Assembly (NCBI RefSeq): GCF_040938485.1
Contig: NW_027272096.1
Location: 248,001-312,000 of the forward strand
Length of the DNA: 64,000 bases
Direction: 5' to 3'
Source: Diadema antillarum
Taxonomy: Eukaryota
Part shown: positions 3,001 through 5,563 of the stretch, one piece after another
How positions within the stretch are numbered: the first letter of the stretch is position 1
Layout: each line of letters begins with the position of its first letter
The notes under the pieces: model-generated
The model's input: the letters and a program-made list of their open reading frames with translations, nothing else
Told to the model about the DNA's origin: nothing
The model's database searches: none
Program-made: the position numbers and the translations under genes

Positions 3001-5563
3001 TTAAAATTGAATATGTATCTGAGGTTTATCATTTTCATGCAGAAAGATATTTCCATTTCTGTGCGGTAGAACGAGTTCTAATGTGTAGAAATAGATTTCA
3101 CGGGTAGGTTTGAATATGCACATTATTTAACCTTTGCTTTCAGAATGCTACGAGCCACAGGAGCCATTGCAAGCAGTGGGTCTCTTGACATACGAAGCCA
3201 GCTTCAGTCAGCCTACTACTATCGCTGGAATCAAGCTACCTGCCATCAGCGCTAGTACAACGACTACAGTGGTATTCAGCATCAAGCGCGCCGAAGGCGA
3301 TGAATGGATTACTGTTCTTGCCGAAAACGCAGACTCGGGATCGGGATCTGGGGACTTCTCCGGTTCAGGATCAGGAGATTCAGAGACTCAGGTGAATCGT
3401 CAACAAACAAGTATTTCAAAGCTTTAACGACCAAAAATAAATAACAGACTTCCTCTCCTCTAGTGTACATGTATGACGAAGAGTGATCTATGCTGTTCAG
3501 TCCGTACCCTTCATTATGTTTGACAGCATTCAATAATATCTGGTCATGTCATCGCCGACAAAGCATTATCAGAAGTCTGCTAGTCTTACTCACATTATTG
3601 TAGTGTATTCGATTCTCTCTTTATCCATTCCTGAAATGAAGTTGCATTTGGAAGCTATTGAATTCTTAGTTGTGTATGTTTGCTTGTTATGTCGTGGCGG
3701 TGAGTTAGCTAAACCGGTAGCGCGTCTGCCTCAGATCCTAAGGACCCCGGTTCCATTCCCGAGTCCCACTTAGCATGTGTTTAATCATGCAGTCCCCTCT
3801 AGTGACAGACAAAACACTCTGTCTCTCAGATAGGACATAAAATGGAGGTCCCGTGGGTGAGAGAGTCACAACTCATGCACGTAAAAGATCCCGCTTCACT
3901 CATTCATCGCAAAGAGCAGGGTATTTAATCAGGTGAAGTGGTCTCACCTTACATGTACATCAACTGAACCCCATGCAAGACCAGCTATTGCAGCTGACTG
4001 TGGGCTATCCAGCTATCTTCTCACATGGAAATGAAACAAACAAATATTGATATCATTTTCTTGGCATTAGATATTTCATTTTCCTTGGTATTCAATGCAT
4101 AGGGCGAAGTAACAGTCGCTTTGAGTGACAGTGCTTCAACAAACATCTGGCTACCATCCACATTGGGGCCTGTGCGAGCTATCCAAGCAACATTTGGAGC
4201 TCCCCTTAATCTGGGAAATGAGATCAAGGTCTACGGCTGCGAGGGTAAGTGCAATTCGAATGACACATTGTGTAAACTGCATGTATTCTAAATCAAATCT
4301 TTTAAGTCTTCATCGTAAGGTAAATCTGTATTGAGATAATACGTTAGCTAAAACCAATAGAAGTATGCATACGTATAACATATGTAGCAACTACGTCCAT
4401 GTACATTCACCAATCAAAAAAGAAAGAAAGAAAGAAAAAAACCAAAAACAACCACAAGTTCGGGACCAGTGCTATATGTTTAATAGAAACCTCAATGACT
4501 CTTAAAAAAAATATGACTATCATAATAAACGAGAGTAAAATGAAAAAGATAGCATTTTTGTTTAAATTGATTAATACACTTATAAATTAATTTATTCATT
4601 AATTTGTGTTGTTAAAATGTAGACCAGTAAACTCATACTTTATTGTTCCTTGTATCTACACATTACAGCGGTAACAACCACTGCTCCATCTACAACAGCT
4701 CCTGGTAATGACCATAAACTTTTATTTCTTTCATCCTATTTTCACAATTGGACAAATTTTGACGGGAAGCGAAAGATTTACAGTTTTCGTAATGATCACT
4801 GCCATATACCCATTTATTCTCTCTCAAAATACAAACTACTAAAAGATAAAAAATCACTTACATGCTATTATGAACTGAGAAAAAAAATGATAGTAATGGA
4901 AAATAACTTATTCCATTCTTTATCATATCATAATATGTAAAATGCTCCTGTACAACCTTTTCGTATGCAATTCAGTGAAGGTGCAATCGACGGAAAAATG
5001 TCCCTTTCTCCCAAGTTAATTATTAAAGAGAATTGAAGTGTAAGATGATCAGTCTGACAAATATTCAGAATCATCCGTTCTTCTCTGTACATACTGAATT
5101 TGAAATTAATCTGAAAGGAAACGGCCGTAACGTTCAAAGAATTCAAGGTAGTGTCCTCTTCTCGCTCCCAACACATACCACGTTATACACTGTACTGGTA
5201 TTTGATTTTTGTGGTATTTTCTTGTCCACTGTTAAGGTTTGATCCCTTTGCAGAAATCTAAACATTGTCTGTAAGGTCTTTCGTGATTGTCCATTGAAAA
5301 GCAAGATGAAAGAAAGCAAAGTGGCTATTTCTTTTCTTAAACATCTAAATCCCTTCTTGCATTATTACCTTTGAAAGTTGCTATGTACAAATTTAACATA
5401 TCAAGTCAAAAAAAAATCTGTCGTTTGATGCTGCATTATTACTATAGCTATTTGTATTATTTATTGACAGTATCACCACAAGACACCGGTAAAAATATAT
5501 ACATATATGTATTAAGCTTTTTTTGTTCTTATATGATTGTTGATTCCGTTTGCAAAATTGGTT

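What the first reader, a model, noticed from the sequence alone, without database searches (positions are those of the whole stretch)
3144..4244. Mini discoidin-like domain with an inserted acidic Ser-Gly loop (candidate GAG attachment cassette)
Seen: A+B is about 128-130 aa with one Cys at each end (ECYEPQEPL...EVYGCQ). YEASFSQPTTIRGIK parallels LQVDFSVPTRVTGID of the canonical FA58C at 13973, and VRAIEATF...EIEVYGC parallels IRILP...RIELRGC. About 40 N-terminal FA58C residues are missing. Just before the phase-0 intron sits DSGSGSGDFSGSGSGDSE (6 SG here, 5 SG in each of 8 array copies). Known: Ser-Gly repeats flanked by acidic residues are the acceptor motif for xylose-linked glycosaminoglycans. 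Inference: a folded beta-sandwich displaying GAG chains from a loop every 406 aa; I do not recognise it as a named domain.
Basis: partly seen in the sequence, partly recalled or inferred. Interest (0 to 1): 0.8.

Follow-up and report, generated by a model that had tools for sequence, protein, structure and literature searches.

The report
Mini discoidin domain with Ser-Gly loop
A giant mucus-type protein of the sea urchin Diadema repeats a shrunken discoidin (blood-factor C-domain type) module with a floppy acidic Ser-Gly loop that looks like a sugar-chain (glycosaminoglycan) attachment site, though no such chain has been shown.

Summary
Exon A (3144-3391) and exon B (4103-4244) splice in phase 0. 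They give a 128-aa module with one Cys at each end and DSGSGSGDFSGSGSGDSE just before the intron. Eight more copies (5 SG each) sit in a 3.83-kb tandem array whose spliced unit is exactly 406 codons.

The window is Diadema antillarum. Contigs of one public run show the same GT..AG joints.

The fold reading is supported:
- AlphaFold2 gives pLDDT 79.6, with the SG loop disordered.
- The best structural matches are discoidin and CBM32 domains, end to end (Z 9.6).
- No Pfam family matches.
- The genuine FA58C domain in the same gene has the same exon phases and intron position, so the module is probably a derived FA58C.

An exhaustive HMMER search with exon A found relatives only in Diadema. Glycosaminoglycan attachment fits published acceptor rules and the loop is conserved, but it is untested. 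Phosphorylation or an unmodified spacer remain open.

The scan noted the same kind of module on another piece of this genome (s1-208785). I rate it a new variant of a known kind, of moderate interest.

The parts
3144..3391 (+). Exon A of the module in the finding: N-terminal Cys, four to five predicted strands, then the Ser-Gly loop. Enters in phase 1, leaves in phase 0.
   Evidence: Orthologous to P0001:5552-5634.
3332..3385 (+). Coding sequence of the acidic Ser-Gly loop DSGSGSGDFSGSGSGDSE (6 SG).
   Evidence: The equivalent residues 65-81 of the model have pLDDT below 50.
3392..4102 (+). Phase-0 intron (GT..AG) between exons A and B.
   Evidence: No tRNA or Rfam match inside it.
4103..4244 (+). 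Exon B: last four predicted strands and the C-terminal Cys (..VYGCE). Enters in phase 0, leaves in phase 1.
843..984 (+). Exon B of the preceding module. Its exon A lies upstream, in or beyond the N gaps.
   Evidence: Orthologous to the module at P0001:5346-5473.
35010..62392 (+). Tandem array of 8 A+B modules, period about 3.83 kb. Exon A starts at 35010, 38897, 42390, 46228, 50059, 53890, 57720 and 61551. Exon B starts at 35719, 39597, 43094, 46928, 50759, 54590, 58420 and 62251.
   Evidence: The copy with exon B at 43094 is frameshifted.
46228..46469 (+). Exon A of a representative array unit. Its product is identical to P0002:62-141, the sequence that was folded.
   Evidence: Joint 46469|46928 in run X6.
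46928..47069 (+). Exon B of the same array unit.
47425..49609 (+). Rest of the 406-codon unit. Thr/Pro-rich exons M1 (47425-47466), M2 (47806-47829) and M3 (48041-48205). One-exon two-Cys module D4 (48506-48916). Thr-rich exon M4 (49418-49609).
   Evidence: All joints are GT..AG in run X6.
13973..14277 (+). First exon of the canonical FA58C domain of the same gene (phase 1 in, phase 0 out).
   Evidence: PF00754 E 4e-9. Splice sites.
15010..15154 (+). Second exon of the canonical FA58C domain (phase 0 in, phase 1 out). It starts just before the LFKANSD strand, the same place as the A|B intron.

Best explanation
The module is a shrunken, fast-evolved discoidin (FA58C-type) beta-sandwich. It probably arose from an FA58C exon pair like the one still present 10 kb downstream in the same gene.

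It lost about 40 residues, mostly N-terminal of the LQVDF-type strand, and so probably most of the long ligand-binding 'spike' loops. It kept the terminal Cys pair that ties the two ends together. It gained a roughly 20-residue disordered acidic Ser-Gly loop at the 3' end of its first exon.

The module is strung 15 or more times, between Thr/Pro-rich mucin spacers, in a secreted polymer-forming (VWD-C8-TIL) giant protein of Diadema.

Most likely role: each sandwich is a rigid, disulfide-clamped bead on the mucin thread. It holds out a flexible loop that xylosyltransferase uses as an acceptor. The protein would then carry clusters of glycosaminoglycan chains at regular intervals, making it a mucin-proteoglycan hybrid gel.

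Shown: the exons, the splicing, the repeats, conservation of the loop, restriction to Diadema at sequence level, and absence of a Pfam match. Predicted: the fold and the disorder of the loop. Inferred: descent from FA58C, the disulfide, secretion, and above all glycosaminoglycan attachment.

My confidences: discoidin-derived fold about 0.8; glycosaminoglycan acceptor about 0.45.
For: Fold:
- AlphaFold2 on an 18-row alignment of natural modules gives pLDDT 79.6 and pTM 0.75. It predicts eight to nine strands, with residues 65-81 (the SG loop) below 50.
- VIA-align against 48,161 PDB representatives: best Z 9.6, rmsd 2.8, 109 residues aligned to neuropilin-1 b2. 28 chains reach Z>=8, mostly FA58C, CBM32/62, DDR, FV/FVIII C2, CASPR2, discoidin I and muskelin.
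- Among Foldseek's own top 1000 candidates, 80 chains reach Z>=8. The 50 rows shown are almost all neuropilin, FV/FVIII and DDR, plus a few bacterial FA58C/glycosidase domains. Most run from the N-terminal to the C-terminal Cys of the target.
- ESM Atlas rows with PF00754 have TM 0.59-0.61. Language-model neighbours with a family name are F5/8 type C.

Descent:
- The genuine FA58C in the same gene (PF00754) has the same phase pattern 1-0-1. Its intron lies just before the F-x-(G/A)-N-x-D strand, where the A|B intron lies.

Expression and splicing: the NCBI model P0001 and the spliced contigs of run X6.

Loop conservation:
- Nearly every S and G of the loop core is kept in 17 modules of two species, including one module only 48% identical overall.
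- Between paralogues at dS 0.33, the 12-codon SGSGDFSGSGSG core has 3 synonymous and 0 non-synonymous changes.

Acceptor rules from the literature:
- Xylosyltransferases prefer -SG- flanked by acidic residues, and all mapped human CS sites lie in disordered or low-complexity regions (PMC10424144).
- A functional CS sequon ends ...GGDFSGWGG and needs its upstream acidic cluster. Added SG repeats gave longer chains on SULF2 (PMC13405426).
- Several SG sequons with acidic residues C-terminal are typical of HS sites, and CS is the default (PMC10570366).

Pathway in sea urchins: Fam20B, the linker xylose kinase, is present (PMC5865150), and embryos secrete a CS matrix (PMC11632948).

Secreted polymer context: 3 VWD, 3 C8, 4 TIL and VWC domains in P0001.
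Against: - No Pfam hit for the whole module at E<=1 and no PDB sequence relative. Profile comparison with FA58C is not significant on its own.
- Foldseek's best E-value is only 5e-3. Z 9.6 is only a little above the 7-8 that unmatched models commonly reach.
- The alignment used for folding is shallow (close paralogues), so the model rests mostly on the network's priors.
- I had no access to coordinates. Neither the Cys-Cys distance nor the side of the barrel from which the loop projects was measured.
- Mapped glycosaminoglycan sites sit in linkers or tails, not in loops inside folded domains (PMC10424144). The SULF study leaves open whether a sequon works outside a disordered domain (PMC13405426).
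- The acidic flank here (1-2 residues on each side) is much weaker than the seven-residue cluster that study found essential.
- No glycan data exist for this protein, and the tissue of expression is unknown.
Confidence: 0.5

Rival explanations
1. The fold is the same, but the Ser-Gly loop is a substrate of secretory-pathway kinases (Fam20C type, Ser-x-Glu/pSer) rather than of xylosyltransferase. Stepwise phosphorylation of SGSGSG-E/D would give a strongly acidic, calcium-binding loop that cross-links or mineral-binds the gel.
For: Array copies read SGSGSGESES, which contains S-G-E. Each serine two residues upstream could then follow as S-x-pS. The Fam20C motif is Ser-x-Glu/pSer, and sea urchins have two Fam20C genes (PMC5865150).
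Against: In the finding's own copy and in many D. setosum copies the run ends SGSGSGDSE. Its last loop serine is followed two residues on by Asp, not Glu, so priming would be weak. Repeated SG with acidic flanks and an aromatic residue is the classical glycosaminoglycan pattern (PMC10424144, PMC10570366). The two modifications need not exclude each other.
Confidence: 0.15
2. The loop is an unmodified flexible acidic spacer, or carries only short O-glycans. On this view it is a tolerated expansion at an exon end inside a surface loop, with at most a hydration or hinge role.
For: Low-complexity inserts often grow at exon ends and in surface loops. The copy number of SG varies from 5 to 6. Ser-Gly sequences alone do not suffice for CS addition (PMC13405426).
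Against: The SG core and its acidic flanks are kept in every module of both species. This includes the 48%-identical one, and the changes within the core are synonymous only. The codons are not a simple microsatellite. Concerted evolution of the array could mimic part of this conservation.
Confidence: 0.25
3. The module is not a discoidin derivative but an unrelated small beta-sandwich, for example Fn3- or Ig-like, that merely resembles one.
For: The exhaustive search gave a bacterial repeat protein (P0003, E 3e-10 over 13 stretches). Its Fn3-like repeats share the hairpin TTVTFEY..WITVPA with TTVVFRI..WITVPA. Sequence profiles do not link the module to FA58C significantly.
Against: That match covers only 34 of 80 profile positions and owes its E-value to 13 repeats. 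Rows with Z>=8 in the fold searches are mostly discoidin/CBM32-type and contain no Fn3 or Ig domain. Intron position and phases, the terminal Cys pair, and the FA58C neighbour in the same gene all point to FA58C.
Confidence: 0.08

Closest known systems
FA58C / discoidin domain (Pfam PF00754), e.g. neuropilin b1/b2, factor V/VIII C1/C2, DDR1/2 DS, CASPR2
   Same: The predicted jelly-roll beta-barrel aligns over the whole module (Z up to 9.6). There is one Cys near each terminus. Local motifs correspond (LQVDF-type strand, W strand, ...E-V-Y-G-C end). The exon phases and intron position match those of the FA58C domain in this very gene.
   Different: The ordered part is about 110 residues instead of about 155. 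About 33 residues are missing before the LQVDF-type strand, so the long spike loops are probably missing too. The family HMM does not match. A 20-residue Ser-Gly loop lies between the W strand and the next strand.
Neuropilin-1 as a part-time proteoglycan (Ser612, SGTGDDF; PMC5087894)
   Same: An extracellular protein with discoidin domains that carries CS or HS on a Ser-Gly site with nearby Asp and Phe.
   Different: By my recollection, the neuropilin site lies in the linker after the b2 domain, not inside a discoidin domain. There is one site per protein, not 5-6 serines in each of 15 or more modules.
Ser-Gly clusters of serglycin, syndecans and glypicans
   Same: Runs of SG with acidic flanks. 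Pfam Serglycin gives a weak compositional hit to the loop (E 0.035-0.23, below threshold).
   Different: Those clusters lie in disordered tails or linkers of small core proteins. There is no homology beyond composition.
Gel-forming mucins with small folded domains interrupting the Pro/Thr/Ser regions (CysD domains of MUC2/MUC5AC; from my own knowledge)
   Same: VWD-C8-TIL assemblies at the N-terminus, long Thr/Pro-rich spacers, and a roughly 110-130-aa folded module repeated between them.
   Different: CysD is Cys-rich and has a different fold. It is not known to carry glycosaminoglycan.
Echinoderm adhesive and matrix proteins built from FA58C and VWD modules (sea-urchin Nectin with six FA58C domains, sea-star Sfp1; PMC10057474)
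   Same: Secreted echinoderm proteins that combine discoidin domains with VWD and other adhesive modules.
   Different: Those use canonical FA58C domains that Pfam recognises. They have no Ser-Gly loop and no mucin array. No expression data link this gene to tube feet.

Membership tests
FA58C / discoidin domain (PF00754) | The sequence matches the family profile above its gathering score. | tested here: not met
   No Pfam family at E<=1 for the spliced modules P0002:61-190, P0001:5552-5681 and P0001:4017-4144. The separate exons also gave none.
FA58C / discoidin domain (PF00754) | Distorted jelly-roll beta-barrel of eight major strands. | tested here: met
   Predicted model only: pLDDT 79.6. 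Top matches are mostly FA58C/CBM32-type, with Z up to 9.6 and 105-109 residues aligned.
FA58C / discoidin domain (PF00754) | Disulfide joining a Cys near the N-terminus to a Cys near the C-terminus. | tested here: inconclusive
   There is exactly one Cys at each end, invariant in 18 modules. Structural alignments run from Cys to Cys of the targets.
FA58C / discoidin domain (PF00754) | About 150-160 residues with protruding loops ('spikes') that form the ligand site. | tested here: not met
   126-128 residues including a 20-residue insert, so about 110 are ordered. By the hhalign anchor, 33 fewer residues precede the LQVDF-type strand.
Proteoglycan core protein (xylose-linked glycosaminoglycan site) | Ser-Gly with acidic residues close by. 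| tested here: met
   D-SGSGSG-DF-SGSGSG-DSE at 3332-3385, and E-SGSG-DF-SGSGSG-ESE in the array. Rules from PMC10424144 and PMC10570366.
Proteoglycan core protein (xylose-linked glycosaminoglycan site) | The site lies in an accessible, disordered stretch of a protein that passes through the secretory pathway. | tested here: met
   Loop pLDDT is below 50. The orthologue has VWD, C8, TIL and VWC domains and a hydrophobic N-terminal leader. Caveat: the loop sits inside a folded domain, which mapped sites do not.
Proteoglycan core protein (xylose-linked glycosaminoglycan site) | A glycosaminoglycan chain is actually attached to the serine. | not testable with these tools
   Needs enzyme digestion, a xylosyltransferase assay or glycoproteomics.
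Gel-forming mucin | N-terminal VWD-C8-TIL assemblies and a long Pro/Thr/Ser-rich centre. | tested here: met
   P0001:1-1660 has VWD x3, C8 x3 and TIL x4. Thr/Pro-rich exons lie between all modules.
Gel-forming mucin | C-terminal cystine-knot dimerisation domain. | not tested
   The gene runs off the window. P0001 ends after VWC/TIL/VWC without one and is probably truncated.

The most novel reading that the evidence does not exclude
A folded discoidin-derived domain has been turned into a dedicated presenter of glycosaminoglycan acceptor loops. This would be the first case I know of in which xylosylation sites are embedded in a loop of a compact domain and repeated dozens of times. It would make a polymeric mucin that is also a heavily substituted proteoglycan. 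The fold may help decide chain type or spacing.
Probability: 0.3. Interest if true: 0.7.

Novelty: new variant of a known kind. Interest (0 to 1): 0.5.

Why it matters
If the loops do carry glycosaminoglycans, this protein shows that acceptor sites need not lie in disordered tails. They could instead be displayed from a rigid domain at fixed spacing. That bears on the open question of what tells xylosyltransferase, and the HS/CS decision enzymes, which serines to use.

It would also describe a new kind of marine hydrogel, a disulfide-linked mucin with regularly spaced sulfated chains. The animal is Diadema, whose epidermal and connective tissues are of ecological and veterinary interest because of the Diadema die-offs.

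Even without glycans, it is a clear example of a discoidin domain that was stripped down, given an insert at an exon end, and amplified within one genus. It also shows that the current D. antillarum annotation cuts this gene into many 222-aa fragments.

Tried and rejected
1. Pfam on single exons and on whole spliced modules gave nothing except a sub-threshold compositional Serglycin hit.
2. A PDB sequence search with the module profile found only artificial Gly-Ser linkers.
3. hhalign of the module profile was run against the window's FA58C, the D1-D3 modules, the D4 modules and the loop-less two-Cys module P0001:2424-2528. It gave only short, non-significant stretches, so I do not claim sequence-level homology to any of them.
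4. The bacterial hit P0003 is a shared beta-hairpin in Fn3-like repeats. I rejected it as a relative.
5. An RNA-run search for the finding's own copy listed none. Splicing evidence therefore comes from the array copies and from the D. setosum gene model.
6. The spliced peptide of the 3144-4244 copy has no reference, so it was not folded itself. I folded the identical-to-window array copy (P0002:61-190), with its D. setosum orthologue in the alignment.
7. The D4 module folded poorly (pLDDT 60). Its fold matches (best Z 6.9) are inconclusive.
8. I tried to place the loop at the spike end or the terminus end of the barrel by strand parity and remembered structures. I got no consistent answer and left it open.
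9. ARAGORN and Rfam found nothing in the A-B intron.
10. A literature search for Diadema mucins or proteoglycans found nothing relevant.
11. It is less sensitive than the exhaustive HMMER run already done.
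Full report
**What is in the sequence**

The stretch 3144-4244 holds two exons with canonical splice sites.
- Exon A is 3144-3391. It follows AG at 3142-3143, begins with two bases that complete a codon (phase 1), and ends in phase 0 before GT at 3392-3393.
- Exon B is 4103-4244. It follows AG at 4101-4102 and ends one base into a codon before GT at 4245-4246.

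Joined, they give 128 residues from the first Cys to the last, with no other Cys. The acidic Ser-Gly run DSGSGSGDFSGSGSGDSE is encoded at 3332-3385, directly before the phase-0 intron.

tblastn with the two peptides finds a lone exon B at 843 and eight further A+B pairs between 35012 and 62391. These lie about 3.83 kb apart and each has 5 SG. Two details need correcting. Two of the quoted strings (TTIRGIK; VRAIEATF...EIEVYGCQ) are from the array copies rather than from 3144-4244. One array copy (exon B at 43094) is frameshifted in this assembly.

**Source and gene**

An exhaustive HMMER search of 1.84 billion representative proteins with a profile of exon A returned only three proteins.

P0001 is XP_072179196.1 of Diadema setosum, 5918 aa, named 'uncharacterized protein'. 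P0002 heads a cluster of nine 122-238-aa 'uncharacterized' models of Diadema antillarum.
- The A and B parts of P0002, and its read-through tail, are identical to the window's array unit. The window is therefore D. antillarum.
- P0001 has a hydrophobic leader, three VWD, three C8 and four TIL domains, VWC domains, four D4-like modules, one loop-less two-Cys module, and 15 A+B modules separated by Thr/Pro-rich spacers. It ends with VWC-TIL-VWC.
- Its last two modules are the orthologues of the window's exon B at 843 and of the module in the finding.

**Expression and splicing**

No RNA run was listed for the finding's own copy. For an array unit, contigs of run X6 (same organism, library type not on record) skip every predicted intron at GT..AG without a mismatch. 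The joints are:
- 46469|46928 (A-B)
- B-M1
- M1-M2
- M2-M3
- M3-D4
- D4-M4

All exons of the unit are phase 1-1, apart from the internal phase-0 intron of the A+B module.

**Fold**

The spliced peptide has no reference of its own. I therefore folded P0002:61-190, which is identical to the window's array copies. The alignment had 18 natural modules from the two species.

AlphaFold2 gave mean pLDDT 79.6 and pTM 0.75, with eight to nine strands. The one segment below 50 is residues 65-81, the Ser-Gly loop.

Structure searches gave the following.
- Foldseek against the PDB found no match at E<=0.001. Its best rows (E 5e-3, probability 1.0) are neuropilin b1 and bacterial F5/8 type C domains.
- VIA-align against 48,161 representatives gave Z 9.6 (rmsd 2.8, 109 residues) for neuropilin-1 b2. 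28 chains reached Z>=8, mostly discoidin or CBM32/62-type domains: DDR1/2, factor V/VIII, CASPR2, discoidin I and muskelin.
- Re-alignment of Foldseek's top 1000 gave 80 chains at Z>=8. The 50 rows shown are almost all neuropilin, factor V/VIII and DDR, plus a few bacterial FA58C/glycosidase domains. Most span the target from its N-terminal to its C-terminal Cys.
- ESM Atlas shape matches with PF00754 reach TM 0.59-0.61. Language-model neighbours that carry a family name are F5/8 type C.

A Z of 9.6 is only modestly above what unmatched models often reach, and the alignment is shallow. I treat the fold as predicted, not proven. Still, the predominance of one fold type in the hit list and the end-to-end coverage are what a true discoidin-type fold would give.

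**Sequence-level membership**

No Pfam family matches the whole module at E<=1. No solved structure is related by sequence; the only hits are artificial Gly-Ser linkers.

That anchor leaves 17 residues before it in the module against 50 in FA58C.

The third hit of the big search (P0003, a bacterial repeat protein) shares only a beta-hairpin with the module. I reject it as a relative.

**An independent argument for descent from FA58C**

The genuine FA58C domain of the same gene (PF00754, E 4e-9) is encoded by two exons, 13973-14277 and 15010-15154.
- Its phases are 1, 0 and 1, the same as in A+B.
- Its first exon begins E-D-C-Y, and exon A begins E-C-Y.
- Its intron lies just before the LFKANSD strand. 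The A|B intron lies just before (GE)VTFSLSD, the equivalent strand.

Four things point the same way: the same gene, the same phases, the same intron place, and the same terminal Cys pair. Together they make a derived FA58C the most economical reading. The Ser-Gly run then sits at the very 3' end of the first exon, in the loop between the W strand and the next strand. That is a position where an insert would not disturb the barrel.

**The loop**

In 17 modules of two species, nearly every S and G of the loop core is kept. This includes one module only 48% identical to the folded array copy, which reads EGSGEISGSGSGSGDSQD.

Between the finding's copy and an array copy, dS is 0.33 and dN/dS is 0.42 overall. 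In the 12-codon core SGSGDFSGSGSG there are three synonymous and no non-synonymous differences, and the flanking changes are D/E swaps. The codons are mixed (TCG, TCT, TCC, TCA; GGA, GGG, GGT), so this is not a fresh microsatellite.

Concerted evolution in an array can inflate such conservation. The evidence is therefore suggestive rather than strong.

**Does the loop carry glycosaminoglycan?**

Published rules fit in several ways.
- Xylosyltransferases prefer -SG- flanked by acidic residues. All CS sites mapped in the human urinary glycoproteome lie in disordered or low-complexity regions (PMC10424144).
- A 16-residue sequon ending ...GGDFSGWGG is sufficient for CS addition in human and Drosophila proteins, and its upstream acidic cluster is essential. 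Extra SG repeats gave longer chains on SULF2 (PMC13405426).
- CS priming is the default. [quoted passage not shown]
- Sea urchins have the linker xylose kinase Fam20B (PMC5865150) and secrete a CS-containing matrix (PMC11632948).

There are also points against.
- The acidic flank here is short compared with the cluster found essential in the SULF study.
- Known sites are not inside folded domains.
- Nothing about this protein's glycans is known.

The same loop also partly fits the Fam20C motif Ser-x-Glu/pSer in the array copies (SGSGSGESES). It fits less well in the finding's copy (SGSGSGDSE). I therefore give glycosaminoglycan attachment about 0.45, phosphorylation as the main modification about 0.15, and no specific modification about 0.25.

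**Mechanism proposed**

The protein is a secreted, disulfide-polymerising mucin. Each A+B module is a compact sandwich whose two ends are tied by the terminal disulfide. The incoming and outgoing Thr/Pro spacers therefore leave from the same pole, and the module hangs on the thread like a bead.

The 20-residue loop is free to enter the xylosyltransferase cleft. If used, each module would carry up to five or six chains. In D. setosum that means every roughly 200 residues over 15 modules. In the D. antillarum array it means every 406 residues, alternating with the D4 module.

The stripped spike region suggests that the canonical ligand-binding function of discoidin domains was given up. I could not establish which pole the loop leaves from.

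**Comparison and novelty**

The fold class and the acceptor motif are both known, and so are mucins with small folded domains between their glycosylated stretches. Three things are new:
- a discoidin-type domain reduced to about 110 ordered residues that escapes the family profile;
- a conserved Ser-Gly acceptor-like loop inside it;
- its amplification in one sea-urchin genus, with no detectable relative elsewhere at the sensitivity of an 80-position profile.

The closest functional parallel, neuropilin-1, carries its chain at Ser612 (PMC5087894). By my recollection that site lies in the linker after its discoidin domains.

I file this as a new variant of a known kind. A second D. antillarum contig with the same 222-aa models exists.

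**Limits**

- There was no access to model coordinates.
- No RNA was listed for the finding's own copy.
- The run that shows splicing has no recorded library type.
- The taxonomic statement rests on exon A only.

Noticed in passing
window 43094-43235: Exon B of the third array unit is frameshifted. It reads ...EATFGDST*SRK* where the other copies read ...EATFGEALNLGNEIEVYGCQ. This is either an assembly error or a broken unit inside the array.
   Followed up: no
window 49800-49941, and the same place in each unit (e.g. 34735-34886): A Thr-rich pseudo-exon with an in-frame TGA and no clear acceptor. It reads TYTT*ATEQPTTAPG where the upstream intact exon at 2594-2812 has TYTTSATEQ. The NCBI models splice M4 straight to exon A and skip it. 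One low-depth X6 contig joins 49941 to the start of exon A. So it may be used in some transcripts, or that contig may come from an intact paralogous unit.
   Followed up: partly
window 34381-62392; L001: The D. antillarum annotation cuts the array into separate 222-aa and 122-aa 'genes' (XP_071476399 and others). These start at a Met inside exon M4 and end by read-through into the intron after M1. The spliced contigs continue M1-M2-M3-D4-M4, so these models are fragments of one very large gene.
   Followed up: partly
P0001:2424-2528 (D. setosum; upstream of the window's part of the gene): A 105-aa module with one Cys at each end, a ..GQTWSNIV.. strand and ..GPLVLGIRANF.., but no Ser-Gly loop. 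It is possibly the loop-less relative of A+B. hhalign support is weak (P 0.04).
   Followed up: partly
window 11863-12228 and onward to 33700: The D. setosum model P0001 ends ...PPPPPPSKWKV. In the window, another frame after the same proline run continues as a Cys-rich ORF (PPPPPPACDITEE...). Same-strand exons follow: FA58C, the D1-D3 modules, a 297-aa Thr/Pro exon at 21432-22322, and the array. The real gene is probably much longer than the annotated 5918 aa.
   Followed up: no
window 48506-48916 (D4) and 18568-23695 (D1-D3): One-exon two-Cys modules without a Pfam match. D1-D3 are related to each other (31-42% identity), and D4 to four modules of P0001 (27-28%). AlphaFold2 of D4 was poor (pLDDT 60). 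Discoidin/CBM32 folds appear among its matches but do not stand out (best Z 6.9).
   Followed up: partly
P0003 (metagenome protein, 1965 aa): A bacterial protein with about 13 Fn3-like repeats and a C-terminal formylglycine-generating-enzyme-type domain. It shares the hairpin TTVTFEY..WITVPASP with the module. I take this as convergence, not kinship.
   Followed up: partly
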